From contig OZ287712.1 of assembly GCA_965649825.1 (NCBI GenBank), positions 62,001-126,000 on the forward strand: DNA of 64,000 nt. The letters run 5' to 3'. The position numbers and the translations under genes were made by a program. The number at the start of each line of letters is the position of its first letter. Within the stretch, counting starts at the first letter, position 1. Positions 7,633 through 53,324 of this stretch are shown here, one piece after another. The notes under the pieces were generated by a model that was given only the letters and a program-made list of their open reading frames with translations, was not told the origin of the DNA and made no database searches. The DNA is from Penicillus capitatus (Eukaryota > Plantae > Chlorophyta).

Positions 7633-10600
7633 ATGGAGCCGAAGTCAAAGTGGTTCGACCTTGCAGTATTTCAGGAAGCACTTAAGCTTTCATTGGACAA
7701 AACAGCTGCTTGGATGTCCAAAGAAATATTGCAAACTGCGGAGACGATTATGCGTCGCTCTGCGATAGAGTCGACCGAGAGTAACTTAACAAAAAACGGA
7801 GCGGCGGCCTTCTTTGCATGCATCGTGCAAGCGTACGCCGTCAGAATCTTCAAAGCGAAAACAAGCGCCTGCGGTCCACTGGCTCAAGTGTTGGACTGGT
7901 TCATTACGAACGTGTCTCCTGCACAGAGACGCGCCATTTACGACGTTCTCTTGAGAGAAAGAGAATACGACGTTTCAAATCTCTCGGTTGTTGTCAAGAC
8001 AAAGGGCGGAGGAACAAGGCCAAAGTTAGTGAAGGAAGCCGAGCATCCTAGAGCAGCGATCATTCTTGAACTGCTCTCGCTGAGTGACGCCACAGGAAGT
8101 GCCATCGATGCTGTCATCCGTCTCTTGCAAAGAGTAGTTTGCGAAGAATCAGATGGACTTAGCGATAGCTCACTGCCATCAACATCCACGTGGAAGGACG
8201 ATGCTTTCATGCCTCAACTTGTGGGAGAAATCCTGTCTTCCCCAGAACTCCTTCTGTTGTTCTTTGATCCTATGACAGTGACTAGCCTCTCTCCTGGTGT
8301 CCTCGATGCGGCAGACATGAAGGAAATTCAGGTGAATGAAAAAAGCATTGTGGTCTGGAGCGATGGTCGATGTGATGAAATCCGAAGCGGCAAACTAGGA
8401 CCTCGCACGCGTGTCGATCAACTGCTTCTCAAAGCTTTGAGCGCTTGCAGATCGGAAGATGCCTTCGCTGCAATCGCTGCCAATCTTACCAGACTGTATA
8501 AAGAGCCAAAGATCTTCAAAAGAACACAATTCCACAAAATCCTGGAAACATGGATCTCTTCAGAAGACAACCCAGCGTTGTCAGTCTTTCTTGATCAGCT
8601 AACCAGTAGACCACGCAAGAACGAGACCCTTCTGTTGGACACCGTCGAGTTTTTCTTCGAGTTGCCTGTGCTGTATGGCACGAGCACTCATCTCTCCTTT
8701 GATGACATCTGTGGTTTGGCTGCTTCTTGCGCCGAAACCGTTAGCTCAGACAAATCGTCTGATTTTCTTACAACGTGTTGTGCATCCCTCACAGATTCTG
8801 AAATCAACGTCGAAATGCAGAGAGACTGGTTTTATGAACGTCTCCATCTGTTGTCTCTTTTCTTTTCAGAAGAAACCGATTTTGTGACAAAATCTGCCAT
8901 CAGTGATGGATTTGTCACAGCGCTGTTTAAGATGTTTTTATCCATATACGGCAACTTAAAATCAAAGAAAGAAGATTTGCCTTCTGCAGTCTTCTCCGAT
9001 TTCAAAGCCATTTCTGATGGCTGTTGCAGAAAAGCGCCCTTTTCTGTTTTTTCTTGCCTGCTAAAGGCTTCTGCTTCTAATTACGACACATTTGTGCAAC
9101 TGTCTGAAGCCTTCTGCTCGATCGGGATGTTGGACAGATGGGCAAGACGCGTCAATTCCGAAGATGCACTTGTGCTTCTAAAATTCTGTCAGACGACAAA
9201 GAGCACAAACACCGAATACTTATCAACAGCCTTTTGCGTTCTCCTTCAATCGGATGCTGGTCGGGCGGCAGTGTGCAATGCCTCGAGCGAAGATGTCGAT
9301 TGGACAGAAGTGTGCAAGACACTACTGCGCACAACATCCGAGAGTGCTCTATCAAATGACATTGCATTGTCTGTCATTCGCCTGGCCTGCGTTATCGGAC
9401 AAGATCATCGCCAGTATCTGGTGCTTGCCATGATATCTGAAATAGACAAGATACTCTGCGCGGACATCCCAGAAGAAGATTTTGCCGCCTTCATCAACGC
9501 GCTTGCGGATGGTTTGAACATCCTTGATGATATGATCACTGCTATCTGCAATGCAGCAGTCCAGCGAGCATCGTTGACGAACGTTCGCTTCTTTGATCAC
9601 CTGACGAGGTATTTCGCGAATACATCCGAGACTGGAAGAAAAGCTTTGAGAGACGCACTGTTTTCAATGATCACCGAGCTCCTTGATCTGCTACAAGAGA
9701 ACGATGAGAGGGAAGGGACCGAAAATCTGGTGCATCTTGTTCGTTTCCTCATTGACGGCACATCTGCAACACATAGCACACATGAAGACCAGTCATCTAG
9801 TGAAACGCATCCTGTCATCCCGGCATTCATGTCTGCCACCCTTCCAGAGGGCAGAAGCATCATCCAGTCAGAAAGCGCATCATCGACGGACCTTAAAAGG
9901 ATTGTTCAGATACTCAAGCAGCCAAAGCTTTCCCTGGATAGTGGACATGTGCGCAAAGCCATTCTCCAAAGGGCGGAGGCCGTCTGCACAGGTGAACAAA
10001 AGAACGAGAACATCTCGTCATCGTCATCCCTGATACTGACGGACACAACCGAAGAAAACATGACGATGATCCAAGAGGCGGTTGCAGATGGAAGCCCTGT
10101 CTTGCTGATCGGATCTACAGGGGTAGGGAAAACGGCAACGCTTACGGAACTGTGTTCTCGTATGGACGTCGAATTCGTGAGAATCAACATGTCATCCAAC
10201 CTGACCACCGAAGATTTTCTAGCAAAAGCCTCTGTAAACTGTCAAGGGGAAATCGTCCAGCAACTTCAACCCTTTGCAAAAAGCTATCGGAATGGAGCCT
10301 GGGTGCTGCTCGACGAAATGAACTTGGCTGAAGAAGCATCGCTCAAAGTCATTGTCGATGCTTTGGAATCGGAAGAGATTTCCATCTCTGATCAGAGTTC
10401 TGCTATGTCTTCGACTGTCACCATCAAAAAGCATCCGGAGTTTCGCTTGTTCGCAACCCAGAATCCATGGCAAGCCGGAAAGCGTGAGCGCATGAGTGAC
10501 GCCTTCTTGTCTCAGTTTTCCATCATGCATTTCAAAGAACTGCCGGAGCATGAATGGAGACAGATCGTCGAGGAAAAGATATCAAGAGGCAGTGCTGGCG

Positions 10601-13600
10601 GTGACCCAATGCTCATCCAGAAGCTGGCTAAGCAGATGACAGAGTTTCACTCCGATCTCCGATCAGAACTCAGTACCAAGTGCTCTGAGAAAGGCAGCTA
10701 TGCCACCATCACTAACCGAGAGCTGTTGATGTGGACGGATATGATCCTGGCAGAAAAGGCGCTTGTCCGAGCAGACGAGAAGATGGGCGACTACGCATGG
10801 TCCATCTATGGGAATCGATTCCGTGACGATGGGCGCCAATTGGTTCGGGATAGCATCGACCGTCATCACCTACCCCTCAACGCGATTGGATCTCAATCGG
10901 AGAGTGTGATGGAGATGTTTTCGATGATAGAGGGGCCATGTCACAGGAATGATGCTATCCTCATGGATGACTTCTGGAAAACGCACTTTGCTTGCGTGCC
11001 ATCTCTGAGTGAAGATGAGATGTTTGCGTTCGACATCTGCGCCGAAGCTCACAGAACAGTGTTGCGGACCATCCTGAGTCCTCAGTTCATGAAAGCCTTC
11101 GGCATCTACACGACATTCTCAGAGTCATGGATGGCCAACTGGGTAACAGATGCCTTGGAAGGGAATGTCTTGGGAAGAAGGACGCTGACAGAACTGGGTC
11201 AGCTTGGAGCTTCTGGGTACTGTTCACGATTCAGACACGAGGATGCACGAGATGTCATCCTGGATGCCTTTGTCCAGACATTTGGCATTTCTCCGGCCGA
11301 TGTGCAGACAAATGGCAAGGCTACCGTGCCTGAAATGCCCATCGCTCTCAGCAATCGAACGTGTGAATCTCTTCACTCCATGATCGAAGCGATTCGCAGT
11401 GAACTTTCTGTTCTGATCGAAGGCAACGCTGGATGCGGTAAGACCTGTCTCGGAAAGGTCATCGCCTTTCTTCTGGGCAACCAGTATGAACACGTCACAC
11501 TTACGCAAGACTCGGAACCTGCTGCAATGCTCGGAGAGTATCTTCCAGGCCAAAGCACTAGTGCTCAATACCACGTTGAATGGACTGATGGTCCATTGAC
11601 CAGAGCGTTCATCGACGGTCGTGTGTGCATCGTCGATAACATTGGGCATGCGGAACCGGTACTCCAGGAAAGAATCAATCCTGTGCTGGAATCGCCAAAG
11701 GTGTTGTGTCTGACGGAAAGGGGAGATACCCAGCCACTCTGTTGTCGCGTCCTTGCTGATGGGACACTATCGGATGCGCCTGGACCAGCGAGGGGCTTCC
11801 AGTTCATTGCCACCTACACTCCCAAAGGTGCAGCGACAAGAGGACACGACAGCTCGTCCAAGGATCTCACCGCTGCCCTTTTCAATCGCTTTTTCATCAT
11901 CCACATCGATGATCCGGCAGAGATGCCAGACGAAGGATTCTGTCACACTCTGGAGTCGATGCTGGGATGCTGCCTGGCCAGTCATCGTTATCAAACATCC
12001 GTCGATATGATCTGCACCTACTGCTTGAGGATACGAGAGTTCTTGTCAGAGGAATGTCAGACATCGACATCTTTCAGAGACTTTGTCGCAATGGTAGACA
12101 TTGCAACGATCCTGATGGATCAGTTTCCTGAGCTGGATGTGCAAGATGCACTTCACTCGGCACTGATGGCGACATTTGTCTCTCGCATGAATGATCCACA
12201 GGCAAGAGACGCGCTGTGCTCTCAGATGGGATGTCCGGGTGACATACTGGATGAGCTTGGATTGCTCGGTGGTTTTGCCATCGATTCACATCTGGTTCTG
12301 ACCACTTCGAGAAAACGACATGCACAGGCAGTCCTGTTGGGCGTCCTCACCAACAAACCAGTGCTGCTGGAAGGAAAGCCAGCTGTTGGAAAGACGTCGC
12401 TTGTGATGGGACTGAAGGGGTTTGGTGGTCCTCCTGCTAACAGAGTGCGGATTCTGAGCAACAGTGACACGACGACCGTCCAGGACTATTTTGGAGCCTG
12501 GCTGCCTGCAAGTGATGGGTTCACTTTTCAGAAAGGGATTCTCATTCAGGCCATGGAGAATGGTGAATGGTTTATTGCGGATGAGTTCAATCTAGCTCCT
12601 GTCGCAGTGACAGCTGCACTGATGCCCTTCCTAGAAGGCAATCGCATCGTCCAAGTTCCTGGGAGCAACATTTGTGTAAACATCCATCCAGCATTCAGAT
12701 TCTGTGCCACTCAGAATCCATCACACGGAGGAAGAGATGGTCGAAAACTCCTACCCATCACCATACGGAATCGATTTCTGCTGGTCGAGGTCGAAGACTT
12801 CCCACAAGACGAATTCTCAGAAATCATCTACAAGCGATTTCAGAGTAACGAGAGCGACGACCTCGTCAAGGAAGAAGATGCTGATGCACTGGCAGAGTTC
12901 TACTTTCTCGCAGGCGAGAGCCTTCACCTGACCATGAGAGACATCATTAAGATCGTACGGAGATATAAGCTTCTAGAAAATGAAGGGCAGCAAAGTGTGA
13001 CCTGGGCTGAAGTTACAATGTCTCTTTTGGGTCCACAGATGGCGACAGAGGATGATATGGCCAAGCTTCTACAGTTTATCGAATCGAGCTTTGGCGCTGT
13101 TGGATCGCTCAAGGCAGCAGCTTGTGAAGCCAAGAGCATAAAGCAAGAGGGCGATGGCGTTCGTTTCTCTCAAGGACACCTCTGTGTCCACTTCCCTGGA
13201 TTGCAACTCGACAACAGTCCGTTGTGGCGAAAGAGCGTCACGGGGAAAGGACCACCAGCAGTTTTCCAACACAAATTGATCGATCTGGCTTTTGCACTGA
13301 AGGCAAACGAACCTGTATTGCTGTACGGAGAAACGGCATTCAAGACGGAACTCATCAAGACCTGGATGGAACTGTCAGGAATGCCAGACAGTGTACAGAG
13401 GATTCATCTGACCTCACAGACAGAAGCCACTGACCTAATTGGCCAGGTACAACTCGTGTCCTTTGTCGAAGTCATCCAGAGACTGGCGACCACAAGCCAA
13501 AGCCTCCTCTTGCAGTTAACACGAAGCATACCCAGACATTCACGGTCCGCTCAGATGTCACTGAAGATGACATACTTGCAGCATCTCCAACAACGTCTGC

Positions 13601-16600
13601 GGAAAAGTGTTACCCTGTTGATCGAGGAATCTCAAGGAAAGGATCGTGCTGAGAAGGGTCAAAGTGGACGTGTGCATGCCGCGTTCGCAAACTCTGCTGA
13701 AGCGGTCTCTCAAGGTGAAGAAATCAGTAGCGAAAGTGATCCCGAAGACGATTACGATGCGTTCGAGTTCGGAGCCTCGTCCGATACCGATGAGATGCGA
13801 TCTCAAAACGAAGCAGCCAATTGCGAGGGCGAATCTGATCACGGTGAAGATTACGATGCGTTTGAATTCCACGCCTCAGAAGAAGAAGACAGCGATTACG
13901 ATGAAAGGACTGCCGATACTCCTTATCGGGATGGCGCTGGACAGTCTGCTAGACTTGATGAAGATAGCAATGGGTGTGCTGCCTCCGATGGCCTGTCTGG
14001 AGATGATGATGTGCTCTTCATGACAAAGAACAAACAACTGATAGACATCTATGATGTCACCGGAGAGATTCTGGACTTGTTGTTGGACGTCACTCGTGAC
14101 AGCATCTCTGCTGCACAGAAGAGGATGGTGGAGCACTTGAAGCAACTCCGAACGCTCATGCGCACATCAGATGCACGAAACAGTCACCCATGCTTTGTGT
14201 TCAAGGACGGTGCGTTCGTGAGGGCAATCACCTTGAAGCACGCGTTTGTTATGGAAGACTACGATCTTTGTCCCCAATCTGTGACAGAGAGGTTGAACAG
14301 CGCTTTGGAAGTTGATCCGACATTCTGTATCCCGGAAGACATTTCCTTCTCAGACAGCGCCGTCGCTGACATCGGCATTCCTCGAGAGGGTTACTGCTTC
14401 ATCGCCACCGTCCATCTGGATTCAGCATCGCTGAAGAGGCCACCGCTAAGTGCCCCGACCCTCAGCAGACTGACCCAAATCCGATGCCCTGTTTACCAAA
14501 CGTCCGACATCATGGTCATCGCAGAGGAGAAACTCCATCATGAACTTGCCAACGAAGAGAAAGAAACGCTCCCTTATCTGCTGGAACAGATCAATGCAGT
14601 ACGAGCTGCAGTCATTGGCGCAGATCCTGGACACCCGTGTGAAGATTTCAGAAGAATTCTGAGGTGGATCAGCTTCATCACGAATCATCCGAGAACCCTG
14701 AGTCTGGAGAAGAGGTGTATGTTGGGAGCCAAGTTTTTGTACTTGGCTGCATATCCAACGGACATCCAGGATTCAGTACTGCAGAACTGCTTTCCTGATG
14801 CCTTCAGAGCTTTGAAAACCAATCTTGCCATCCTTGTACCGGAGAACCCATTCACATTCCAGGAAGCCGAGAAATCAGGGTGCAGGACGATATTGCTCAA
14901 GTGGTTTGGGCTTTCATTGGAGGTGCCAACCAAAACAACGGAATCACCTCGAGGACTCGCTACACCAGAGCTGTTTCTGTGCCCGACAGCCTCGGTGTGC
15001 GAAAACATAGCCCGAATATTCGCATCCATCTGCACAAACGCACCTCTGTTGCTCGAAGGAGCCCCTGGAATAGGTAAGCAATCATCATCTGCAGATTCCT
15101 TCCAGCCTTGATTCTTGTCTATCAGGGAAAACGGCAATCATTACGCAAGTTGCTCAGGTACTTGGAACAGATCTGGAGCGCATTAACTGCTCCAGTGACT
15201 CCACAGTCGAGCAGCTGTACGGATCCGTGATGCCAATGTATATCGACAATCGCAGAGTCTTCGAATGGAGAGATGGCAAGCTGCTTAAGGCTCTGAAAGA
15301 GAAGACATGGATTCTATTGGACGAAATCAATCTGTTGCCTGCTCAGGTGTTGGAATCCCTCGTTCCTCTGCTCAATGGCTCTGCAGAGGCAGAGGGATTC
15401 GCAGTACCTGGCAAGCTGGATCAGGAACGCCTTCGTGTGCAAGGAGCTCGCATCTTTGCTACAATGAATCCGTCCGTGGAGGGAGGAGGAAGGACTCGAC
15501 TGTCACGGTCGATCAAGAATGCCTTCGTTACCGTTCAAATGGATAGCTACAGGGACGACGACCTCTATGAGATCTTAAAGAAGCAGTTCCAGGAGCTCAT
15601 TGAACAAGATCTTATCGAGGAAGACCATCTGCAGAACGTTTTCGATGTCTATAAGAGAGTTGAGCGACTGGTAGAGACCGGCCAGATTCAAGGAATGAGT
15701 CGAAAGCAGACGTTTAATCTGAGAGATCTGGCCGCCGTGCGTGACATTGTGGCCAAAACAATCAAAACTCAGATGTCGCATCATAGACTCATCACATGTG
15801 ACGAGAGCCAGGACAGTGCACCGGTGTTTGACAGCAAAGCAGTTACCCTAAGTGTGATACGCAAAGCGTTGCAGTTGGTATTCAAGCATCGTTTTCACGA
15901 CCGAGCGGCACAGGATGAAGTACAACACGTCATTGACGAAACTGTGAGATCGTCGCAGACAGAACTGTCCCACGGCAGTGCTTCAACAATAGACGTGTCT
16001 GTGAGCGAGCTCATTCGGATTGGAAGTGTTTACATGGAAAAGGATGAAAGCCAGTCATCTCGTGGATCGCTCGTTCCCACAGTCGACACTGTCTGCCAGT
16101 TGGAGCTGCTGGCAACGGCCTGTCAATCGCAAAGGGCAGTGCTTCTGGAGGGACCGACTTGTTCAAAGAAGACGTCACTTGTGAAAGAGTTGGCCGCACT
16201 GACAGGGACGCCTCTGTTTATTCTGTCACTTCATCGAGACTTCGAAGCGTCGGATCTGATTGGCCAGTGGCTCCCTGTCCTCGCCAGAGATGTCGAGATC
16301 GATTTACTGGAATGCGTGCGCAGACTGAGAAACGACGTTGCTAGTCTGGGACTGAAGGGCATCGAGAGGACACCGCACGACAAGAGAGTTCTGGTTTACA
16401 AGACGCTGAAGAAGTTATACACAAAAAGCAGCTCAACCGTCACTCTTGAAGAAGCAAAACATACGATCGAGAGCATCAAAATTGCGATCGAAGCACTGAA
16501 GGGCTGCCGCAGCACGTCGACGGGCTGGAATGCGCTGACGAAGATGGCATCAGATTTGGAAGACAGAGTGTTCGCGTGTGCAGATGCGTCGGCGTCGACT

Positions 16601-19600
16601 GTCTTCAAGTTCGTCGAATCGAATCTCGTCAAAGCCCTCAAGGCTGGGTCATTTGTTCTATTTGATAACATAAATGCCGCATCTCCAGACGTGATTGACA
16701 GGCTCCTGTCGCTGTTCGAGGAAGTTCCGTTTCTTAACCTCCACGAGCACTCAGATGGAGAGAGACTCACCGTTGGTTCGGGCATCCATCCAACGACGCG
16801 CATCTTTGCCACGGCAGACAGAAAGAAGATGAACACTTTCGGCCTCTCCAGTCCATTGCTGAATAGAATGATCAAGATTTGGCTGCCGCAGATTGACGCA
16901 GAGGTGTGTGATCTGGAACTCGATGAGCTCGAGCGCCATGAGATCGTCGACATTGTTTCGAACAAGTTTGAAACATATGCCGGACACAGGGCAGCTGCTC
17001 TGCTTGTCTCTTCCTTCCACGGAAGGGTGACAAGACTGGCGAAGACTTCTGAGATCTCCATTACGAAAGACGCCAAGATCAGCTTCAGGATGCTGGAGCA
17101 AGCCTCTTCTGTCATCCGCTCTTGGTTAAGCAAGAATGAGAGTCTCTTTTCTGCTGTGGCGTGGGGACTGTGGAGAACGTATGCATCTGTGCTCGAGAAT
17201 GAAAGAGATCTGAAGCTGTTGCAGACAACAATGTGGCAGTTGTGTGATCAGATCACCGATCTTCCTCTGGATAGATTCTACACTGTTAATGGCAGGTCAG
17301 ATATGCTCACATCATTCCAACAGGAAAGCAGCGACATCCAGTCTGTCTTCGCGCATTTTGTTCAAGCGTGTATGAAACGCATACTCAGACGGATCCTGGA
17401 CATCGAAGGTCATCCCAGTTTCCTCAAGGCAATAACGCTCTTTCTCAGAAAGCTCTTTTTGAAGCTTCACCCACAAGAAATCTCAAATGCAAATGACATC
17501 CTCAAGAACGCCAGGACTGCATCCGAATTCGCTCACCTGTGTGCTCAGAGAGGAAGCTCCGTCGCAAGATACCTTGAAGAGACGAGCGAAACAGAGAGCA
17601 GAGGATTTCAGTACTTTAGTCAAGACCCAGAAAGGTTGACAAGGATGGCCAAGCGATTTGTGCGCAACTCGACCTTCGTTGACTGGAGGCAAAGGAAGGC
17701 CTTCGTCCAAGATGTGGGTCTGGTGCTCAAGAATCTGCATTCTGTTCTGGACGATGATGCGATGGACGATGTCGAGGAACTGGTGAACGACAAGAGACTT
17801 GTGAAGACGCTGTCGTCTGTCAGGCGTGTGATACAATACTTCCATCCACTGGAGAGAGAATCGTTTGTCAAACATGCCGAGCACTTAAGCGCACTCCAGC
17901 AGCAGTGCAGCGACAAGGCCTTGAGATTCAACATTCGGAAGATGCTTGGCTGCACTCTCGTGGAAGCGGACACAAAGCTTCTGCTCTCCATTCGGAGCTT
18001 GGCAACGGAAGCCGACGTGTCTACGACGGATATCAACAAAACTGCCATCTCTTTCTCCTTCGCTGCGTTGGACTTCAAAGCGTCTCTCCTTTTGGATGAT
18101 AGGCTGTTGCTTTTCCATCAGGAAAGCATTGCAGCAGAAGAGGTCATTGAGATTCAAAGAATGTTCAGTCGCTTGAAGGTCATGGCAGAGGTGCATCCGT
18201 TGATGGACAGAGCCCTCCGAGCAGGAGAGCCTCGGCAGAATACTGAAGGAGTCATCACTAGCTGCTCAGATTTGGCGCCCAGCTTCTCTCAGTCTGTCGA
18301 GCAAAACTTCTACCTGGGTAATCCTGACGGAGCTGGTCCATCGACATCGAGCGGCCATCGTCCGGATGAAGACATCGATGCGAATGCTTCCGTTCAAGGA
18401 ATCATTCAACAGTTTGACTGTCTCATGGGATCTACCGATTGTGTGCTTGCCACACAGCATGAGTTAGACAGTGCTGTTGATCTTCATAGCAGCATCTTGG
18501 CCTATCTCCAAGAAGAGGCACGAGCCGACCATTGCGTCTTAGACAAGATTGATGTCACAATTCGACGTCGGCTGCAAAGGCGACTGGAGGAGTTCAACGA
18601 AAGCTCATGCACGAGCGACTTCCACATGGTCTGGGCGGTTCTCTTCAATCCCACCGTCAAGACCTGCATTCCCTACAGAATGATGAGATGCTGTGAAGAG
18701 CATCTGTATACAGATCTATCTGGAGATGCGCCCATAGCTGCTACGATTTTGGTGGGTCAGCTCGGCTCATGCACCCCTCTCTCCGATCTGATTTCTCTCG
18801 TTGTCATCGAACAGCAACAGATGTTGCCAGATACCAAGGACAGCAAGAAGTCTATCAAACTGCAACATTATGTATGGAGCCAAGAGGGCTTGTCGACTCG
18901 CAAGTGGCTTCGGCAATGGATGAAGGCGCATGAGAACCAGTATATCGTTACCTTAGAGGAGTGCCAGTTAACAAGAGAAGGCTGTTTCGATGATCAGCAG
19001 TCGAGATTGAGCTGCACTCTGCTAACATGTCTTTACACACTGACGCGTCTGCCGGAGCACGAGATAGACATCGACCCGTCAGACGACCGTAGAGCCCGTC
19101 TGTTTATTTCCGAGTTAGAATCCCAGATGAAGACATTTAAGGGCTTCGTGGATGCGCACTTCGATGAGAAAGACAACTGCCTTTCGCGTCATCTACTCTA
19201 CGTCGATGCCACACTGAGAAGAGCCGAATTTCAGGGTGTCTTAGACATGGCAACCAAAAAGCAGATGATTGAAGCAGTTGCTCCTTTCGAAAGCACAGAA
19301 CTTGAAGTCGTGAAGAACAGCATCAATGCGAAGCTGAAGGAGATCGAAGAGAAGCTGACATCGTCTGAATGCGAATCAGCGTCTTACGCCTTTAGTCTTA
19401 AGTTACTCCTGGAAAAGTTAAAGGACTGTCCTGTTCAAGAGCTGACAGTTTGCCTCAAGAGCCTTCTTCAAAAAACAGAGCATCGTTTTGGCGATTTCTT
19501 TGCTGCTCTGGATTTCATCTCGCCGGTCCTGAAACTAAAAGACTTCTTGATAGGATACTTGACAGAAGCCGTCAATGTCAAGAGCTGGAAGACATGCCAA

Positions 19601-22600
19601 ATGACTCGGCTGTTTATATCGGACGTCGTTGCAAGTTTTGTCGCCCTCTTGGTCATTGATGACGACGGTGTGAGGTTGGACACGACACATCCGTTGAAGG
19701 ATTTTGATGATTGGCAAGAGAGGTTTGATCGCCTGACCGCCAAACTGTCAGTCCCTCCAAGTCTGCTAACAGAAAATGATCTCCACGACGTTTTTCGTAA
19801 TCTGAAGAGACGATTCGAGGATTTGAAGTCGAAAGGCATTGCTAAGGATAGCGCCTGTGCGGTCGACAGTCACATCGATGAAGGGGGCGCGTCAAAAGAA
19901 CAGAATGGGTATGCGACGACGCAAGAATGCATGGCCATGAGGAGGTTATATGACCTGAAACGGGATTTCCAAGAGTTGTGGAAGAAAGCAAAGAGCCATG
20001 AGCTGCCATTAACGTCTGTCATGTTTGAAGCCATGAAGAGCGTTCAGGCGCTCGACTGCCTTACCCAGGCTGATGTCAATGAGATCTCTCTGGCGAGATA
20101 CCAGGTCAAATTGGACAATCTCAAAACGAAGATGGCTGAACCACATCTGCAAGAAAGCAGCCACACAGAAGATGTCCTCTCTGAAGCACTGCAGGATCTT
20201 CTGACAACGCGAGCAGGGTGTGTTGCTGCCGCCGATTTCTCCTTTACAGCATACGAAGCGGACCTCGCCAGCTCAGCGGATGTTCAGAGAGTCGTCCAAT
20301 CCATGCAACAGCTGTATTCCATCGTCTATGAGCCGCACGACACCAAAGATGTCATGGACTACTTGATCGGCATAACACGTAGCTGTCAGAGACAGTCCGT
20401 GTGGGAGATGGCCATTGAAGCTGCTCGTCGCTGTAAAGCTGAAAGGAAGCTCAAGGAGCGATGGTCTATTCTTCAAGAAATGTCAAATATGCATATCTTT
20501 TCAGATGATCTCTCTATCAAGATGGCGTTTCAGGAGGATGGAGCAACGAACAGTGCATTACTGGAAGCTGCAGTCGATGAACTCATTCGAGGACGAGGCA
20601 GCTCTCTGATGGAAGACTACTTGGACATCTTATCTGGATGGACGACAGGAGAAGTGCAGAAAGCAGTCGACGCTGTTTTGGACCTCTGCTGCGAAGAAAA
20701 GCTTTCAGTGATCAGGTCCTTTTCGCTATTGGAAGAACTGAGAGGACGTCGAAGACAGTTACAAGAATACCTAAATGCACACGCCTCTACCAGCGACAAG
20801 GAATTGTCCTTTGCCTGTCCGAAGCTTCATCATTGTGACGTTGCAGTTGTTTTTAGCTTCGACGCTGGCAGACTGCACAGTCTATTGCTGAACGCACCAA
20901 CACTAAGGACTGGAGCAGAATCTCTTCATAGAGATCCACATAGCCACCACGCTCATCAGCATGGGGGATTGCTTTCCCTGTGCCACTATCGTCAAGAGAA
21001 TGCCTCACCACTCGGAGTGTTCCAGAAATGTGCTCATCAGATCAATGCACTGATCGCGGCGTTCAATCAGTTCAAACTGGAGAGAGAACTGAAAAGAAAA
21101 GTGCAGGAAGATGTCGATCGTCGCTGTGCAATACTGGAAGAGGTCTACAGCGCCATGCAGTTTGTCATGATACCATGGATGCTCTCCATTCAGGATTACA
21201 GTTTTCTTTGGTCGATGGTCCAGCTGTCCTCGACAGATGCATCTCAGAAACGTGTTGAAACTCTGGACCAGAACATCAAGAACGATGAGAAGTATCTCGC
21301 AGATCTCCAACGTCAATTGGAAGACAGACGGGCACTCATCGATCTCGAGAAGCTAACACAGTCTGCTCTTCAACAAGAGAAGGATCTCAAATCCCGTATC
21401 TCTGCTGAAAAGGAAAGGATTGAGTTCCGGAGGCGAGATCTGGAAGAAGCCAATGTGCAAATGGTGGCCCGCAGAGTGGAAATCTGTGATGAACTAGCGA
21501 ACTCACTGAAACAGCTTCTGGAAGAGGGAGCTCTCTGTTTTGGCAAGACGATCGACTCCACTGGTTTCGAAGCATTCTTGCCAAGTCGGCGCTGGGAAGA
21601 CAAGGGAGAACTGTTTTCTTTGTCTCAGCTCGTATTCAGTGAAGCTGGCAATGTGCTGAACAGCAAAAAGGGAGTGAGCGCTGAAGCGCAGCACGCATTG
21701 GACAAGTGGTTGGAATCGAACAAACAGTTTTGCGACGAAGATTTGACTCGGTTAGCAGAAAACGATCCTTTCAGACAAGCACTGCAGATCATATGCAAAG
21801 CTGCAAGACTTGGAAATCTGAAGGCGGCTCAACTGTTATCGACAGTCTCGGATGCAAAGTCTTCAGAGAAGAAGGAGCTGGAAGAGATCAGCAACACAGC
21901 CATGACGATGTCCATACAGCTTAAAGAGATATGCGCTGACAGCTATTGCGATCAATCCGAGATACAGCGAATGGCCAAAGATCTTCTGTGCCTGGAAGAG
22001 CGATGCAGAAACCTGCAGGGAGAAAACTCAAGCCACACACAGAAGAGCTCTCTTGCCTACATCAAGAATCTCATCCTGCAGTCAGTTCATGTATGCTGTG
22101 CCTATGCACATGCCATGCATCCGATGCCCTGGTACAGAGATGATTTGCACCAATTACTGACGGCAAGTGGAATGGATATGCCTCTGGAAACAGCAAGTGA
22201 GGATCGAATGCTGGAAGACATGAGAATTCTTCCGTGTGTTTGGAGAACTTGCCGTTTCTCGATTCTCTCCGGTGCCAGTGAGCATTGTCTTGTGAATCCA
22301 TTCCAGCTCTCGTGGATCATGGATCGCTTTATTCATCGACATGCTCCACTGTACAAACCTGTCTCGTACGCTGGGCGTCTCTTTGGCCAAGAACTCATGT
22401 ACACGTTTGACGTGACTTTCAAGAGAGAAGACTCAGAAGGCCGTCAGCATGTGCTTTTCGATCTTGAGCTTCAGCCTCTGTATTCTCTCTCGACTCAGCT
22501 TCTGGATCTGAATGAAACGTCTCTTCTGCTTTGGACAGTTGAACAGATCCACCATTGTTTCTCTTCTTTGTCTGCAGCACTGGATCAGCTGATTCATAAC

Positions 22601-25600
22601 ATGATGAAGACCAGGAAAGACGCAGTGGCTTATCTGAGTGGCTTCTTGGCTAAGCTTTGTGAGCTGTGGTGGTACGAAGCGTCTTCTAGTTGCATTCAAA
22701 AGATGCAAGAGTCAAGAAGAGCCAACGCAATCGATTCTCTAGAGTCAAGACTGTTGGAGTGTGGCTGCGAAGAAACTGGTTTGACCACCGTGTTGATGCT
22801 CGAAGACTTCAAAGATCTCTCCAAACTCAAGAAGCATCTAATAGACAGAGGGCTGGATTTGTCGCTGATACGACCGGCAACCCATGAGATGGAGTATTTG
22901 CACGTTTTTGCAGAGTTGCTCGATGGCCTCCCATCGAAAGGAGGCAAAATGCTCCTCGACAACTGGAAAACACATCAAGCGTTCGAAACTGGCAAAGAGC
23001 ATGTCAAAGAGTGCAGCAGATTCATGGATATGCATGATGCTCTCATGAAGACAAGCTCACAAGAGATACTTCGTCGCGCTTCTGATCAAAAGGAGTCTTC
23101 ATTGGACGATGCCTGTCACAAGTTCTATCGATTGTGTCATGGAATCCACGAGGAATTAACGGCTTTGATGAACAGTGCAGTGTCCGATCTCCAGGAATTT
23201 ACTCTGAAGGCGTCCGCAATGTCGGAAAGTTGTCATTTGATTCAAGAGAGGTACCACAAGAGTGTTGATGTCTTCATCGAAGACCACCAAAGGAATGAAC
23301 AACGCACTTTTGAAGACCGACAAACAAGATTTGATGAACTCAGCACGGAACTCCAAAAGACAGCAAAGGGGCTCTGCTTGACCTATCGCCAGTTTTGGAC
23401 AGAAACGCATGATGCATTCGAGAGCGACAGCAATCCGGATTGGTATAAGAAGAAAGAGACCGGAATTCCAGATCTTTCCGAGAAGCTGTTCACAGTGTCC
23501 ACTGAACTTAAGAAGCTCTACGAGAATGGCGTGCTGCCTGAACGCTTTAGTTTTGCTGATCACGGCCTGAGATGGAAAACAACTCATGTGACCATCCGAA
23601 ACCTCGAAGTCGCTTCTTTCTTAAATTTCAGCGGCGGCAGAGTAGAGATTGGATGTTCGGGAGGTACTGGGCCAGATGTCACGATTCGTTGGCCATGGGA
23701 AGTCTACGATCAGCTTCCTCTTTCGTACAGAGTTCAGGACGAAGACAACTTTGAGCTCAGGCTTACACTTAAGTGGTCGATTGACAAGTCATTCGAAAAA
23801 GCATTCAGACTGAGAGATCTGTTTGCCTTCAACAAGTTTCCTTTGAATTGTTCGAGCTCATGTTCGCTTCGTCGAGAAAGAGAGGTAGTTGTTGGCTTCA
23901 AAGCTGTGAAGCATATCGTCTGTTTCGGAGAATACTTGCCATCAGACGATGAGGAAGATATCAGTGTCGGAGAACATGTTCAATCTCCTCGTCACAACTT
24001 GGCATCGGAATTGCACTCCCAGTTAGCCCAGTGGGAGCAATGTGTAGAAGAGTTGAAAAGGACTGTCGATGAAGAGGATGACATGCGGGAAAGAGAACGT
24101 CAAGCTGCTCTGGACTTGGAAATGGACGCAGAAGGTTATCAGATGCCCCATTGTCCACACTTTCAGGCCTCTTTGGCATGGGGTTCGACCATCGATGAGA
24201 TTTTCAGCACGGTACAAAATGCTTCCCTCCATTGTGGTTTTGACAGAAAGCGGAAAGTCCAGCTCAGCCAGGCAACGGCCACAGAACTCATTCCGCTCCT
24301 GAATCAGGCACTGGAGGATGCCAAGGGACCGTTCTTCGACGAAACGCTGCTGAGAATCGTCGATCCTTCTTCTACGGATGAAGACCTTTCACGTGTATGG
24401 ACGGCCGAGATGCAAGAGTACTCAAGACAGTTAAAGCAACTCCTGACAGAAGCCATCGATCTGGGAACGTCCGCCATGCACTCCATATTCATCATATGGA
24501 TGCAGTCGACATGTCTGGCATTGTTATCCGTTTCCTCCAACAAGGAATTGAACAGGCTTGACGAGGACTGTGGACAATGGGCACGTTCACTCGACCAGAG
24601 TCTGCTGTCATCTAGTGATAAGGTACTTGATAAACTCCGATGCGACCGAGTGCGCCAAGCAGCTGTATCCCTTGCGAACACCAGATTGGAATGGATCACG
24701 TTTTGCAAAGGTCTTGCAGAGAGTCGAAGGAAGATCGAGCATCTGGAACACCAGCCAGCCATCCTACTACCAGGAACCAGTCTTCGGCACTCGGCTAAGC
24801 TGACGATCATCCAATCGAATCCTGGGGTGTGTGAATTGAGTGGCGAAAACAGAGGGATTGATTTTGGTACTGTACTTTATGCGGCAGACAACCGAAGAGC
24901 GAAGATGGATACGCAGCTCCATCATGTTGAGATCATGAACCAGACTGCTTCGACCATGCTCATCCATGTGCTTCCGTCAAGCACCTCATCGAACATTTTT
25001 TCGGTGATGGCTCCGAGTAGAGCGCGTCTCTACGGAAGATCGTCGCATCGTTTTGCATTCCACATAAACGAGAAGGCAGTTGGCAGAGTTTGTGAGATCT
25101 GGCGGCTTGAATGCACGGAGTACAGACTGTCTGCTGAATTTGAGCTTCATGCCAACATTCAGAGACTTGCAGTGCAGCTCAGTTCAGATGAGGTGGATTT
25201 TGAAAATCTTTTGCCAGATTCGAGTGAACAGAAACGTGTCGTTTACATCAGAAATCTGACAGATCTGCCAATCCTCATCAGGAGTCAGATGCAACAGAGT
25301 GAAGTCCGTTCCGCTGTCTCCATCTATCCAGACAGGGTTCTATTGCCTCCGAGAAAAACCGAAACGATTGCAGTCCTCTTAAGACCCAGTATCTACGAAG
25401 AAACGATTGACAGTCTCGCAGTTATTGGCGCCGTACAGAACTTCAAAGAACTGAAGTTGAAGGGGAGAATCGTCCGACCGAGATTCGTCTTACTGGACAA
25501 TGAAGCCGATAGGAAGATCGACTTTGCCTACGAGATGCCGCCTGTCAGAAAGGGCCACAAAACTACTGGATACATCACACTGAAGAACATTGGCAACGTG

Positions 25601-28600
25601 CCTGTCATCTTCGATGTATCGACAGACTCTTCTCTGCTGAAGGTGCGTCCACAGTCTGGAGTTGTTCCAGTTGGCTGCGTAAGCATCTGGAAAATGTCCT
25701 TAAAGAATCCGAGAGGAGATGGAGTATTCAGATGCCAAGCACAGATCTCTGTCAAGGGCCATAGAGCGAAACATCTGACCGTAGCTGGAAAATGGCTAAA
25801 CCCTATTCCAAGATTCGAAGCAGCATCTGTGCGATTCGACATCATGCCATCTGATATCGTTGAGATGATGGAGAGGGGTGAAAGAGCCTTGACGGTCACG
25901 GCACGGAACACAATGAGAAACATGGAAGACACACCTGTCACTGTCTATCCGCCCAAAAGCGATTGCTTGCTGTTTGACAAGAGAAGCTACACATTGGAGG
26001 GAAAGGAAGAACAGGACGTCGAGATGAAGTGGATCGTAACACGGTTGACGGATAAGAAGCACAAAGTCGTCTTCCTTACAGACAACGGAACCGAATGCCG
26101 CCACTTTGATGTCAGACTCGTCTGGAGCAATAACAGTTTCCAAATCGAGCCGATCAGCAGATTGTTTCTGCGTTCTGTGGAACCGGGAAAGGAGAACAGA
26201 TTCGATCTCAAGATTATCACCGATGCACCATTTGCCATCAAGGACCAGAGTCCGCAGTCTGACATGCTCGAGACCTTGGTTTTGCAAGATGGCAATAGAA
26301 GAGGAAGAGATCGAGAGTCATGGCAGTTTGGCACTGGAGACATGCCGCCGATGTTCAATGTCCATGGTCAACAGCGATCCTTTCAAATCCGCCTTGAGAC
26401 AGGAAAGGCATCTGGATGGATCGTTGAGGACATCTGTATCGAACCGCAAGAGTTCATCCTCATACACGAAGATCTCAGCCGCTGCTCCCGGTTGCCTTAC
26501 AAGTTCACACTCGTGGCGTTTGTATCGGAGAGACCAAATCTGTTCGCACAAATGATACAATCACTGGAACGTCAAAGCAGCACGAGCCGCACAGCAAACG
26601 GTGCTGAGGTTTCCATTCCCGATTTGGACATATTGCCAGCCTTGGCGGATGGATCCAGTGTCCAGTCATTCCTCCTTCTGATGCTATGCGAGATGGAAGT
26701 CCTGCGGTCAGAGTGGAACCTGTATGAAGACGAAGCGAGAGAAATCCTTGAAAGCTCTCCAAGAGAAGCAACGCAACTCTGTGCCCGACGCGTGATGCGT
26801 TTGAGCGGACGGGTGCAACAATACAGATCTTCCAGGTCATACAGGGACGACGTGCGTGACTATTTTGAGAATCTGATAGATCTCTTCGAATCCAAAGGCG
26901 ATGAAGCTATGTTTGACGTGTATCTTCCAAAAGAGGTGCTCAGGAATTGTGATAGAGATGTCCGAACCGTCGCTCAGGCTCTTTACGTGCTGCTCCATAC
27001 TGACTGTCCAGAAGGGCAAAAGTGGAGGGCAGCAACTGCCTGTTTGAAAACCCGAATGAAGGACACTGCTAGCGCAGCGTTATTCGACGAGGCCTCGGAG
27101 AGAATTGCAGAATCACTCCGACAAGAGAAGAGCCGTTCAGTTGTCGAGAGCATCCAATTCCTCAGAAGTGTTTTGCTGGCCAGTGATGAAGACATTGCTG
27201 GCTATCAACTGATGGATCAGATCACAGAGACGGTCAAGAACACAGAGAGCGACGGCGATTTGAATCGTGTCCTTCTGAATCTCTTTCCTGCTGATCTCCG
27301 GAACCAGAAACTCTTCGTCCCGGTCTTGTCATCCACTGAGTACAATTCGCATGAGATGTTGAATACGCTCATCAGAGAGGACATAAAGACAGCCATATCC
27401 GATTTGTGCTCTGGAGACACCGGCAAGATGTTGTCTGGGTTTTGTCGCCTGGCAAAAGAGATGGGATCTCAGTGTCAGAACTGTGATTTTCTGGATGGCC
27501 TCATGGCGATGCTTTCCGAAATGCCGTCGTTGATGCGTGACAGGACATCTGAAAGTGCTTGGACAGAAGCAAGAAACATGATCCAGATTCTTCTTACGCA
27601 GGAAAGGCTAGCTTCTGTACACAATCCGCTCTGCACCTTACGTCTTTGTGTCAGTGAGGCTGTTAGACACGACAACATCCGAAAACTGACAGTTGAAGCT
27701 GTCTTCTCTCTTCTTCCGAGATTTGGCGTGTTCCGTGGCCGAATTGCTGACTCTATCCAGCGTGCTGTCATCGAGATTTCTAATGGCGCATGTTCTGCAG
27801 CTCACATAGAGAATGATCGCGTCATAAAAAGATCGCTGGGGTGGATAAGAGGTTATAAAACATGGGTTGCAGTGAAGGACTTGGTGGCAGAGTGGGTAGA
27901 GAAGAGCGTGGAAGCGGACGCCGATTCTCTTGTGCGTCCCTTGACTGAATTCATAAAGTTAATGTTGGAACGCGATTCCTTTGGCCGATATCGAAGATCT
28001 GTTGACTTTGGCCTCCGTCGGCTCCGGGGGAGTCTGTGCAAAGCATTAAGAGAACTGGACTTGCCATCCATCACACAGGATATCCATCCTCTAAATCTGG
28101 TCTCGAGAGTGATCGCGTTTGCCTCACTGCTTAACATCGAAGCAGAGAAATATCTCGAAATTGCATCGGGACTCTCTTCACTGGCAGAAGGTTTTACAAA
28201 AGAAAACGCTGTATCCTTCTGTCGTGTCATTGCTCAGAATGTTTGCTGTGATTCTCTGTCAGAAGTTGTTGAACTTCTCGACCAGAATGTGGAATCAAAT
28301 GAAGACTTGAAGCAGCTTGTGTTGCAAGCATTGCTGCCCGAGAATACCTTGGAAAGCTTTCATGCATTTGTTCAATCGTGGACAGATGACGTCTCGTGTG
28401 TCGACACAAGCTTTCTGGAGGCAATGGAGAGCGTCTGTGAGAGGAAGGACTTGGACATGCTATCACATCTTGGGGACCTCGTTGCGGCAAAGAGGGCTGT
28501 GATGACCATGGATGAAGACGACATGGAATCCATTGAGGGTCTTTTAAAAATACGGACTCTTGTTCAAGTACTGGACATATGGAAATGCTGGGAAGGCCAG

Positions 28601-46392: not shown

Positions 46393-46425
46393 GATGAATG
46401 TCAAGATTGGACGTCCGCGTTCCAG

Positions 46426-53322: not shown

Positions 53323-53324
53323 TT

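What the first reader, a model, noticed from the sequence alone, without database searches (positions are those of the whole stretch)
10111..16870. AAA ring with alternating live and dead sites and matching loss of arginine fingers
Seen in sequence: odd modules have intact Walker A and DE Walker B (AAA1 GSTGVGKT/LLDEMN, AAA3 GKPAVGKT/IADEFN, AAA5 GAPGIGKT/LLDEIN). Even modules lack the catalytic Glu or have a broken P-loop (AAA2 IVDNIG; AAA4 GETAFKT/MEDYD; AAA6 GPTCSKKT/LFDNIN). The putative R-finger motif is kept in AAA2 (LFNRF), AAA3 (IRNRF), AAA4 (LSRL) and AAA6 (LNRM), but lost in AAA1 (FLSQF) and AAA5 (IKNAF). Established: in dynein-type rings the R-finger of module n+1 completes the site of module n. 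Inference: sites 1, 3 and 5 hydrolyse ATP, site 2 may only bind it, and the two lost fingers are exactly those that would serve the most degenerate sites (4 and 6). This coherent pattern implies selection for a pseudo-3-fold motor rather than random decay.
Basis: partly seen in the sequence, partly recalled or inferred. Interest (0 to 1): 0.7.

Follow-up and report, generated by a model that had tools for sequence, protein, structure and literature searches.

The report
Giant midasin-like ATPase, alternating active sites
This algal gene encodes an 8,564-residue relative of the ribosome-assembly motor midasin whose six-part ATPase ring keeps working catalytic motifs only in parts 1, 3 and 5, a pattern conserved across an undescribed protein family and different from every characterised single-chain ring motor.

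Summary
Every quoted motif is present, and 10111-16870 runs exactly from the AAA1 Walker A to the AAA6 finger motif. The AAA5 P-loop is split by a 52-nt intron.

The gene (7633-33586, six exons, 8,564 aa) has six dynein/midasin-type AAA modules, HYDIN-like Ig domains and four MIDAS-bearing VWA domains.

AAA1, AAA3 and AAA5 have an intact Walker A, a DE Walker B and a sensor-1 Asn. Each receives a conserved trans arginine from AAA2, AAA4 or AAA6. AAA2 is DN. AAA4 has a shortened P-loop and ED. AAA6 has a broken P-loop and DN.

This holds in about 40 family representatives from green and brown algae, chrysophytes, thraustochytrids, chlorarachniophytes and rotifers. Non-catalytic module cores are as conserved as catalytic ones, so this is not decay.

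Canonical midasin differs: sites 2-5 are live. But it already shares the DN site 6 and the missing AAA1 finger.

Loss of the AAA5 finger with the death of site 4 is family-wide (0/41 Arg; 4/4 in midasins). Loss of the AAA1 finger is confined to the window's clade plus one other sequence, and is not coupled to the AAA6 P-loop state.

A true pseudo-3-fold motor is not shown, because the three dead modules are unlike one another.

Verdict: a new variant of a known kind.

The parts
7633..33586 (+). Whole gene. Six exons: 7633-15073, 15126-32239, 32288-32613, 32661-32850, 32907-33356, 33413-33586 (stop included). Five GT..AG introns of 47-56 nt. Product 8,564 aa.
   Evidence: ORFs, splice sites read, and an assembled translation without internal stops. 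The intron inside the AAA5 P-loop is conserved in loci L001-L008.
7633..10002 (+). N-terminal domain (about 790 aa) with no recognisable family.
   Evidence: No Pfam hit. It is conserved among paralogues.
10003..11322 (+). AAA1 with its lid. Motif-competent site: GSTGVGKT (10111-10134), LLDEMN (10306-10323), sensor-1 ATQNP (10453-). The finger position is Gln961 (FLSQF 10504-10518).
   Evidence: Pfam AAA_5 at 5e-53 and AAA_lid_7. Motifs. In the AF2 model Q961 lies between H4 and b5.
11323..12267 (+). AAA2. P-loop intact (GNAGCGKT 11422-11445), Walker B Asp-Asn (IVDNIG 11629-11646), sensor-1 Thr, finger Arg1419 (LFNRF 11878-11892) serving site 1.
   Evidence: Asn 30/30, Arg 30/30 in the family.
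12268..13242 (+). AAA3. Fully canonical: GKPAVGKT 12373-12396, IADEFN 12574-12591, ATQNP, and finger Arg1714 (IRNRF 12763-12777) facing site 2.
13243..14952 (+). AAA4. The P-loop is one residue short and lacks the second Gly (GETAF-KT 13327-13347). Walker B is inverted to Glu-Asp (MEDYD 14251-14265). Sensor-1 is His. Finger Arg2279 (TLSRL 14458-14472) serves site 3. A poorly conserved, roughly 230-aa acidic insert (13483-14169) carries two DYDAFEF motifs (13750-13770, 13849-13869).
14953..16054 (+). AAA5 with its lid. Motif-competent site: GAPGIG|KT 15058-15133 (split by the intron at 15074-15125), LLDEIN 15314-15331, ATMNP. The finger position is Ala2613 (IKNAF 15512-15526).
   Evidence: 0/41 Arg in the family; Arg in 4/4 midasins.
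16055..17074 (+). AAA6. P-loop Gly replaced by Lys (GPTCSKKT 16151-16174), Walker B Asp-Asn (LFDNIN 16658-16675), sensor-1 Asp, finger Arg3061 (LLNRM 16856-16870) serving site 5. Helical H2 insert at 16283-16582.
24752..26464 (+). Array of Ig-like domains of the HYDIN/CFAP65/Cep192 (ASH-like) type.
   Evidence: Pfam PF22544 at 9e-8, plus Cep192_D3 and Ig_CFAP65. The same families appear on homologous loci.
28745..29074 (+). Acidic stretch (29-31% D/E in 80-aa windows) ahead of the VWA array.
30317..33481 (+). Four VWA domains, each with a DxSxS MIDAS motif: DNSGS 30344-, DISAS 31469-, DCSGS 32183-, DKSRS 32943-.
   Evidence: Pfam VWA, VWA_2, VWA_4 and VWA_3. Motif coordinates. Homologous arrays occur in Rotaria, Cymbomonas and Didymodactylos.

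Best explanation
The region encodes the motor ring of an uncharacterised paralogue family of midasin. It is a single polypeptide with six tandem dynein/midasin-type (AAA_5) modules. A tail of about 5,400 residues follows, carrying HYDIN-like Ig domains, an acidic stretch and four MIDAS-containing VWA domains.

Shown from sequence and conservation: only AAA1, AAA3 and AAA5 carry complete hydrolysis motifs (P-loop, Walker B Asp-Glu, sensor-1 Asn). Each of these sites faces a strictly conserved trans arginine from AAA2, AAA4 or AAA6.

Inferred: site 2 (intact P-loop, Asp-Asn, facing finger kept) binds nucleotide without hydrolysing it, like dynein or RNF213 AAA2. Site 4 (P-loop shortened by one residue, Glu-Asp, His sensor, facing finger lost family-wide) is probably nucleotide-free and acts as a structural module carrying an acidic insert. 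Site 6 (P-loop Gly replaced by Lys/Arg, Asp-Asn) is non-catalytic, as in midasin, and in the window's clade has also lost its facing finger.

By analogy with Rea1/Mdn1 and with MoxR-VWA systems, ATP turnover at the 1/2, 3/4 and 5/6 interfaces would reshape the ring. That movement would be passed to the tail, whose MIDAS domains grip acidic residues of a substrate so that it can be pulled or remodelled. The substrate and cellular site are unknown.
For: - Gene model and domains.
- The closest solved relatives of the ring are Mdn1/Rea1 by sequence (1e-78 to 1e-93). A Foldseek search with the AAA1-3 model gave Rea1 as the top hit, then dyneins.
- The motif pattern is invariant in nine copies at 43-86% identity.
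- Family-wide counts over about 40 representatives. Walker B Glu: 25/26 (AAA1), 32/34 (AAA3), 40/41 (AAA5). Walker B Asn: 30/30 (AAA2), 35/38 (AAA6). Glu-Asp in AAA4: 36-39/40. Fingers R2 30/30, R4 40/40, R6 39/39, R3 32/35, R5 0/41, R1 20/27.
- Non-catalytic module cores are as conserved as catalytic ones.
- The finger residue is equivalent to the experimentally critical Mdn1 arginine. It occupies the H4-b5 position in confident AF2 models (pLDDT 84-87, pTM 0.82-0.85).
- The n+1 finger rule and the midasin pattern come from the literature.
Against: - No biochemical or structural data exist for any family member. Motif competence does not prove hydrolysis or equal use of the three sites; in dynein, AAA1 dominates although AAA3 and AAA4 are also competent.
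- AAA4 was not modelled.
- The tools returned no coordinates, so finger-to-nucleotide distances could not be measured.
- The tail has no sequence similarity to the Rea1 linker or MIDAS domain, so the midasin-like force-transmission step is analogy only.
- One family member (Bryopsis P0200) has lost the Walker B Glu in AAA1, 3 and 5, so hydrolysis is dispensable for at least some paralogues.
Confidence: 0.72

Rival explanations
1. The ring is a coordinated pseudo-3-fold (F1-ATPase-like) motor, a trimer of catalytic/non-catalytic pairs in which sites 1, 3 and 5 fire equivalently. The lost fingers are adaptive co-losses matched to the dead sites.
For: The alternation of complete and incomplete motif sets is strict and holds family-wide. 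The three fingers serving live sites are 100% conserved. The R5 finger and site 4 are lost together, in contrast with midasin.
Against: Even modules are not more similar to each other (local scores 77-124) than odd-even pairs are (46-129), and there is no sign of a triplicated two-module unit. The dead modules differ in kind: AAA2 has an intact P-loop and no insert, AAA4 a 230-aa acidic insert, AAA6 a helical insert. R1 is kept in 20/27 family members although site 6 is equally dead, and R1 loss shows no association with the AAA6 P-loop state (L011). With three live sites out of six, alternation would arise by chance in 2 of 20 arrangements. Two lost fingers would fall on the two broken P-loops by chance in 1 of 15.
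Confidence: 0.25
2. Dynein-like division of labour. One of the three competent sites is the main motor and the others are regulatory. The alternation would then be a by-product of which sites happened to be retained.
For: There is precedent in the single-chain relatives. In dynein, AAA1 is the main site and AAA3/4 are regulatory. Only AAA3/4 are competent in RNF213. Mdn1 sites contribute unequally. AAA3 is the most conserved module here (0.73).
Against: All three sites and their trans fingers are almost equally conserved across the family.
Confidence: 0.35
3. It is simply the canonical midasin (MDN1/Rea1) orthologue of a divergent protist, working in 60S ribosome maturation.
For: Midasin is the best PDB and database relative of the ring. 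Databases label some family members 'Midasin'.
Against: The site pattern differs: 1/3/5 live against 2-5 live. 42 representatives cluster with the window rather than with midasin. The protein has 8,564 aa and four VWA domains, against about 5,000 aa and one. There is no similarity to the Rea1 linker or MIDAS domain. The family occurs in rotifers and algae, which, from general knowledge, also have an essential MDN1. Several paralogues occur per genome.
Confidence: 0.04
4. The degenerate motifs are random decay in a dying gene or an assembly artefact.
For: None beyond the presence of broken motifs.
Against: The reading frame of 8,564 codons is intact after removing five canonical introns. The same substitutions are conserved at 43-86% identity and beyond. 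Dead modules are as conserved as live ones. A near-identical second copy exists in the same assembly.
Confidence: 0.02

Closest known systems
Midasin (Rea1 / Mdn1 / MDN1)
   Same: A single chain with six tandem AAA_5 modules, collinear with midasin modules in alignment. The fingers are of the NRF type on helix H4. AAA6 has an Asp-Asn Walker B, and in the window's clade there is no AAA1 finger. H2 inserts are present in AAA4 and AAA6. An acidic stretch precedes C-terminal MIDAS-bearing VWA domain(s).
   Different: In midasin, sites 2-5 are live and site 1 is 'ED'. Here sites 1, 3 and 5 are live, site 2 is DN and site 4 is 'ED' with a shortened P-loop. The AAA5 finger is lost. AAA2 has no long insert between Walker A and Walker B (67 residues), whereas Rea1 carries its regulatory H2-alpha insert there. 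The protein is 8,564 aa against about 4,900 aa. It has four VWA domains instead of one and adds a HYDIN-like Ig array. The linker and MIDAS regions have no detectable sequence similarity.
Cytoplasmic/axonemal dynein heavy chain motor domain
   Same: A single-chain six-AAA ring. The AAA1-3 arc of the model superposes on dynein with TM-score up to 0.58. AAA1 is live and is followed by an AAA2 that binds but does not hydrolyse ATP. Dead modules are kept as structural units.
   Different: Dynein hydrolyses at AAA1, 3 and 4, and AAA5/6 lack P-loops. It has a stalk with a microtubule-binding domain and an N-terminal linker, and no VWA domains. Sequence similarity to the window is marginal (E about 3e-6).
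RNF213 (mysterin)
   Same: A giant single-chain protein with a dynein-like six-AAA core in which only a subset of sites is competent. Its AAA2 is ATP-bound but inactive.
   Different: Only the adjacent sites AAA3 and AAA4 are competent. It has an E3 ligase module and no VWA domains. No sequence match was found here.
MoxR-VWA partner systems (NorQ/NorD, CbbQ/CbbO, RavA/ViaA, chelatase BchI/BchD, CobS/CobT)
   Same: The same AAA clade: NorQ, CbbQ and CobS are the next PDB hits. The ATPase is functionally coupled to a MIDAS/VWA substrate-binding partner.
   Different: These are homohexamers of one-module subunits with all sites equivalent, and the VWA domain is on a separate protein. They are prokaryotic or organellar.
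F1/V1-ATPase alpha3beta3 heads (analogy only)
   Same: Catalytic and non-catalytic nucleotide sites alternate around a six-membered ring. The trans arginine is kept for catalytic sites, and the non-catalytic sites lack the catalytic carboxylate. This comparison rests on general knowledge and was not tested here.
   Different: These are RecA/ASCE-fold heterohexamers, not AAA+ proteins. They have true 3-fold subunit repetition, which this ring lacks.

Membership tests
AAA_5 (dynein-related / MoxR-midasin-dynein clade of AAA+) | Match to the family profile | tested here: met
   Pfam PF07728 at 5e-53 (exon 1 part) and 9e-29 (exon 2 part), with several stretches each. AAA_lid_7 (the midasin lid) follows AAA1 and AAA5.
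AAA_5 (dynein-related / MoxR-midasin-dynein clade of AAA+) | Arginine finger at the end of helix H4, just before strand b5 | tested here: met
   AF2 secondary structure places residues 961, 1419, 1714, 2613 and 3061 between H4 and b5. AAA4 was not modelled.
Single-chain hexa-AAA ring proteins (dynein, midasin, RNF213) | Six tandem AAA modules in one polypeptide that form a ring | tested here: inconclusive
   Six modules are present, collinear with midasin. The three-module and two-module models are confident and match the Rea1 and dynein arcs. Ring closure itself was not modelled because of the 1,200-aa limit.
Midasin (MDN1/Rea1) orthologue | AAA2-AAA5 catalytically competent; AAA1 and AAA6 without a functional Walker B | tested here: not met
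   Here AAA1 has DE, AAA2 has DN and AAA4 has ED with a shortened P-loop.
Midasin (MDN1/Rea1) orthologue | Fingers R2-R6 conserved, R1 not conserved | tested here: not met
   R5 is absent in 41/41 family members, and R1 is present in 20/27.
Midasin (MDN1/Rea1) orthologue | Rea1-type linker followed by a D/E-rich region and a single C-terminal MIDAS domain | tested here: not met
   The 5,400-aa tail gives no PDB sequence match to Rea1/Mdn1. It has four VWA domains and only a short acidic stretch. Fold-level similarity of the linker was not tested.
Midasin (MDN1/Rea1) orthologue | Reciprocal closest relative is midasin | tested here: not met
   42 of the top 150 representatives score higher to the window than to a midasin and share its motif pattern.
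Midasin (MDN1/Rea1) orthologue | Function in pre-60S maturation (binding the Ytm1/Rsa4 UBL domains) | not testable with these tools
   No experimental data.
VWA8 | About 1,900-aa mitochondrial protein with AAA_5 modules and one C-terminal VWA domain | not tested
   No VWA8 sequence was fetched. No hit named VWA8 appeared among the named relatives. The literature found gives no site map for it. Size and architecture differ.
Dynein heavy chain | Coiled-coil stalk with a microtubule-binding domain between AAA4 and AAA5, and P-loop-less AAA5/6 | tested here: not met
   The AAA4-AAA5 spacing leaves no room for a stalk. AAA5 has a perfect P-loop. No dynein linker, stalk or MTBD family was hit. The only dynein-labelled Pfam hits are the AAA_6 and AAA_7 P-loop modules.

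The most novel reading that the evidence does not exclude
This family is a separate, so far unnamed lineage of single-chain six-AAA mechanoenzymes, alongside dynein, midasin and RNF213. Its ring would run as three catalytic/non-catalytic module pairs (F1-like alternation within one polypeptide). It would drive a 5,400-residue tail with four MIDAS grips and a HYDIN/CFAP65-type Ig array, possibly on a ciliary or cytoskeletal substrate. The family would be ancient in eukaryotes and lost from all standard model organisms.
Probability: 0.2. Interest if true: 0.8.

Novelty: new variant of a known kind. Interest (0 to 1): 0.58.

Why it matters
Single-chain AAA+ rings let evolution specialise each site, and dynein, midasin and RNF213 each show a different outcome. 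This family adds a fourth, strictly alternating solution that is conserved across distant eukaryotes.

It is also a natural experiment. Relative to midasin, catalytic competence has moved from sites 2-5 to sites 1/3/5, and one trans arginine was lost exactly where the P-loop collapsed.

This makes several questions directly testable:
- How many hydrolysing interfaces does a midasin-type ring need?
- What are non-hydrolysing modules kept for?
- How fast do fingers decay after a site dies?

The analysis also flags a large family of 4,000-8,500-residue proteins that databases currently label 'midasin', 'dynein heavy chain' or 'MoxR-like ATPase'.

Tried and rejected
1. Strict co-variation of the AAA1 finger with the AAA6 P-loop was rejected. 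A brown-alga-like locus, L011, keeps Arg although its AAA6 P-loop reads CSRKT. Across the family the 2x2 table is 14/6/6/1, and the six 'not Arg / not Gly' cases form one clade.

2. Origin of the ring by triplication of a live-dead module pair has no support. Even-even similarity scores are no higher than odd-even scores.

3. Window-to-midasin module orthology by pairwise score is clear only for AAA3 and AAA5. Elsewhere, live modules simply resemble live modules. Collinearity therefore rests on the global alignment.

4. A search for sequence relatives of the tail among solved structures found nothing except one marginal hit.

5. Rfam, tRNA and tandem-repeat scans of the window found nothing.

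6. Literature searches for a described family (midasin paralogue, VWA8 site map, alternating single-chain ring) found none.

7. The contig of P0124 has no DNA on file, so its AAA1 could not be read.

8. The organism could not be named. The window is contig ctg338037 of ENA assembly ERZ25074695. A neighbouring CYP38/PsbQ-like gene points to a photosynthetic eukaryote. The closest named homologues are from Bryopsis (38%) and Ectocarpus (30-39%). An early guess of 'diatom' was dropped.

9. The residue-level alignment to Rea1 printed by the PDB search was cut off before the AAA5/6 modules. The MAFFT alignment to midasins was used instead.

Full report
**What is at the coordinates.** The interval 10111-16870 lies inside one very large + strand gene. 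Two giant ORFs (7633-15111 and 15227-32287) are joined by a 52-nt GT..AG intron at 15074-15125, which splits the AAA5 P-loop codons (GAPGIG|KT). Four more introns of 47-56 nt near the 3' end extend the reading frame to a stop at 33586. The spliced product is 8,564 aa with no internal stop.

Pfam finds repeated AAA_5 (dynein-related) modules and the midasin AAA lid. It also finds HYDIN/CFAP65/Cep192-type Ig-like domains near residue 5,960 and four VWA domains at the C-terminus. Each VWA domain carries a DxSxS MIDAS motif. The finding's start and end are exactly the first base of the AAA1 Walker A and the last base of the AAA6 finger motif.

| Module | Walker A | Walker B | Sensor-1 | Finger position |
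|---|---|---|---|---|
| AAA1 | GSTGVGKT | LLDEMN | Asn | FLSQF (Gln) |
| AAA2 | GNAGCGKT | IVDNIG | Thr | LFNRF (Arg) |
| AAA3 | GKPAVGKT | IADEFN | Asn | IRNRF (Arg) |
| AAA4 | GETAF-KT | MEDYD | His | LSRL (Arg) |
| AAA5 | GAPGIGKT | LLDEIN | Asn | IKNAF (Ala) |
| AAA6 | GPTCSKKT | LFDNIN | Asp | LLNRM (Arg) |

In alignment with midasins, the AAA4 P-loop is one residue short and lacks the glycine before the lysine. Its Walker B has Glu-Asp where midasin has Asp-Glu.

**Are these the real arginine fingers?** Three lines of evidence say yes.
- In Rea1, helix H4 of module n+1 carries the finger for site n. For example, AAA5L H4 serves the AAA4 site (Sosnowski et al. 2018, PMC6286127).
- In S. 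pombe Mdn1 the finger motifs R2, R3, R4 and R6 contain two arginines and R5 one. The second arginine is the critical one, and B1, B6 and R1 are not conserved (Kawashima et al. 2016, PMC5116814). This describes the RNRF/LNRF/RNRG motifs seen in the aligned midasins. The window's Q961, R1419, R1714, R2279, A2613 and R3061 fall in the column of that second arginine.
- AlphaFold2 models of residues 790-1790 (pLDDT 84, pTM 0.85) and 2440-3130 (pLDDT 87, pTM 0.82) place each of these residues between a short helix H4 and strand b5 in AAA1, 2, 3, 5 and 6.

A Foldseek search of the PDB with the AAA1-3 model gave Rea1 as the best hit (5jcs, E = 6e-26), followed by dynein motor domains with TM-scores up to 0.58. 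The tools return no coordinates, so finger-to-P-loop distances could not be measured. AAA4 was not modelled.

**More than chance?** Homologous loci were fetched for eight further copies at 43-86% identity. In all of them the pattern is the same residue for residue. This includes the unusual IVDNIG, EDYD and CS[KR]KT motifs and the intron inside the AAA5 P-loop.

An exhaustive HMMER search with AAA5-AAA6 found 2,716 relatives. Of the 150 best representatives (clusters at 50% identity), 42 are closer to the window than to a midasin. Counts in an alignment of the window, five further copies and 35 of those representatives, about 40 in all, were:

| Feature | AAA1 | AAA2 | AAA3 | AAA4 | AAA5 | AAA6 |
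|---|---|---|---|---|---|---|
| Walker B | Glu 25/26 | Asn 30/30 | Glu 32/34 | Glu-Asp 36-39/40 | Glu 40/41 | Asn 35/38 |
| Finger is Arg | 20/27 | 30/30 | 32/35 | 40/40 | 0/41 | 39/39 |

In addition, no AAA4 has the second P-loop Gly (0/33), and AAA6 keeps that Gly in only 11/41. Among five divergent copies, the large-domain cores of AAA2, AAA4 and AAA6 are 65-71% identical, against 65-73% for AAA1, AAA3 and AAA5. The inserts are only 18-19% identical. The non-catalytic modules are therefore under purifying selection as strong as the catalytic ones. This is not decay.

**Comparison with canonical midasin.** Four midasins aligned collinearly show the published pattern:
- AAA1: Walker A intact, but Walker B 'ED', no sensor Asn and no finger.
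- AAA2-AAA5: fully canonical, including NRF fingers.
- AAA6: Walker A intact, Walker B 'DN', finger RNRG.

Four features are specific to this family:
- a live AAA1 (DE);
- a DN AAA2;
- a collapsed AAA4 site;
- loss of the AAA5 finger.

**Matching loss of fingers.** For site 4 and finger R5 the match is convincing. All 41 family sequences have a non-Arg residue (mostly Leu), and all have the degenerate AAA4 site. All midasins have both intact.

For site 6 and finger R1 the match holds in the window but is not a family rule. R1 is Arg in 20 of 27 sequences. The non-Arg cases are the window's clade plus one other sequence. A brown-alga-like locus keeps Arg although its AAA6 P-loop reads CSRKT. 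The 2x2 table of R1 against the AAA6 P-loop glycine shows no association.

Fingers facing the two 'DN' sites (R3 towards site 2; R1 towards site 6 in most lineages) are generally kept. Only the finger facing the site with a collapsed P-loop is lost everywhere. My reading is that a finger decays after nucleotide binding is lost, not merely after hydrolysis is lost, and that the window's clade has gone one step further at site 6. This is inference.

**Pseudo-3-fold motor?** The alternation of motif-competent and incompetent sites is real. A three-fold architecture is not supported.
- Pairwise scores between module cores show that the odd modules resemble each other (133-197), as conserved live modules do.
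- The even modules are no more alike (77-124) than odd-even pairs (46-129). There is no trace of a triplicated two-module unit.
- The three dead modules differ in kind. AAA2 has a normal P-loop and no insert. AAA4 has an acidic, fast-evolving insert of about 230 aa with two DYDAFEF motifs. AAA6 has a roughly 100-aa helical H2 insert.
- With three live sites of six, alternation would arise by chance in 2 of 20 arrangements.
- Precedent from dynein, RNF213 and Mdn1 is that competent sites contribute unequally.

**What the protein is.** It is not a midasin orthologue. The site pattern and size differ, it has four VWA domains, and no linker or MIDAS sequence similarity is detectable. It belongs to a distinct cluster of relatives.

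Named members come from these organisms:
- green algae: Bryopsis sp. KO-2023 (two paralogues) and Cymbomonas tetramitiformis;
- chlorarachniophyte: Chlorarachnion reptans;
- stramenopiles: Ectocarpus, Epipyxis and the thraustochytrid Hondaea fermentalgiana;
- rotifers: Brachionus, Rotaria, Adineta and Didymodactylos.

They are labelled 'hypothetical', 'Midasin', 'Dynein heavy chain' or 'MoxR-like ATPase'. I found no paper describing the family.

The window is contig ctg338037 (20x coverage) of ENA assembly ERZ25074695. A near-identical copy and two more distant copies sit on contigs of similar coverage in that assembly. A second assembly has three copies at about 165x. This suggests several paralogues per genome, though it is not proven. 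A neighbouring CYP38/PsbQ-like gene points to a photosynthetic host.

**Most likely mechanism.**
- Shown: the motif distribution and its conservation.
- Established for relatives: site n is completed by the finger of module n+1, and midasin couples ring ATPase activity to a MIDAS domain that grips substrate.
- Inferred: ATP is hydrolysed at the 1/2, 3/4 and 5/6 interfaces. Site 2 holds nucleotide structurally. Site 4, and in this clade site 6, are empty spacers or hinges that carry inserts. Ring movements are transmitted to a long tail whose four MIDAS domains bind acidic ligands on an unknown substrate. The HYDIN/CFAP65-type Ig array is a weak lead towards a ciliary or cytoskeletal context.

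**Limits.**
- All functional statements rest on sequence.
- No coordinates were available.
- Ring closure and AAA4 were not modelled.
- The family tree was not computed, so counts of sequences are not counts of evolutionary events.

Noticed in passing
window 13750-13770 and 13849-13869 (protein residues 2040-2046 and 2073-2079): The acidic insert of AAA4 carries two copies of an acidic-aromatic motif, [DE]DYDAFEF. Degenerate versions occur in the closest paralogues (for example DDYNAFEF and DDYDAFGF in P0002). The rest of the insert is only about 18% conserved. The motif looks like a short linear docking motif.
   Followed up: partly
P0200 (Bryopsis sp. KO-2023, GMH34713.1), family member: One Bryopsis paralogue has lost the Walker B glutamate in all three otherwise live modules (AAA1 'EG', AAA3 'DN', AAA5 'DG'). 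A second Bryopsis paralogue (P0194) keeps DE in AAA5; its AAA1-AAA3 are not in the alignment. P0200 may be an all-dead pseudo-ATPase copy.
   Followed up: partly
L006 and L007 (Logan SRR33785046/45), AAA1 P-loop: These two homologues have an extra short intron inside the AAA1 Walker A (GVGK|..|TAT), mirroring the family-wide intron inside the AAA5 Walker A. In these same two copies the second glycine of the AAA2 P-loop is replaced by Phe or Tyr.
   Followed up: partly
L010 1-3677 (ENA ERZ25074695 ctg340425): A copy of the gene more than 90% identical to the window's sits on a 703-kb contig of the same assembly, about 6 kb from an LTR-retrotransposon-type ORF pair (gag-aspartyl protease; RT, RNase H, integrase). 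The window contig (20x against 37x) may be the alternative haplotype.
   Followed up: no
window 6-4181 (+): The + strand here is strongly purine-rich (AT skew up to 0.33). It encodes, in several exons, a long Glu/Lys/Arg/Gln-rich coiled-coil-like protein with no Pfam match.
   Followed up: partly
window 38688-40587 (-): An ABC transporter gene (ABC_membrane plus ABC_tran) split over two overlapping ORFs, presumably by an intron or frame change. The 86%-identical locus L001 also has an ABC transporter near the giant gene, but on the other side.
   Followed up: no
window 51825-52742 (-), 45832-46572 (-), 47992-48894 (-): Neighbouring genes are a CYP38-like thylakoid-lumen PsbQ-like domain protein (which points to a photosynthetic host), an RRM protein and an Armadillo/HEAT-repeat protein.
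   Followed up: no
window 52000-58000: A GC-rich block (0.57-0.58 against about 0.50 elsewhere) with long overlapping ORFs on both strands (53316-55347) and no Pfam match for the 501-aa ORF.
   Followed up: no
AAA6 P-loop, window 16151-16174 and the family alignment: The glycine before the P-loop lysine of AAA6 is replaced by Arg (17), Lys (8) or Ala (5) in 30 of 41 family representatives. A basic side chain inside the phosphate-binding loop is a recurrent, apparently favoured way of closing this site.
   Followed up: partly
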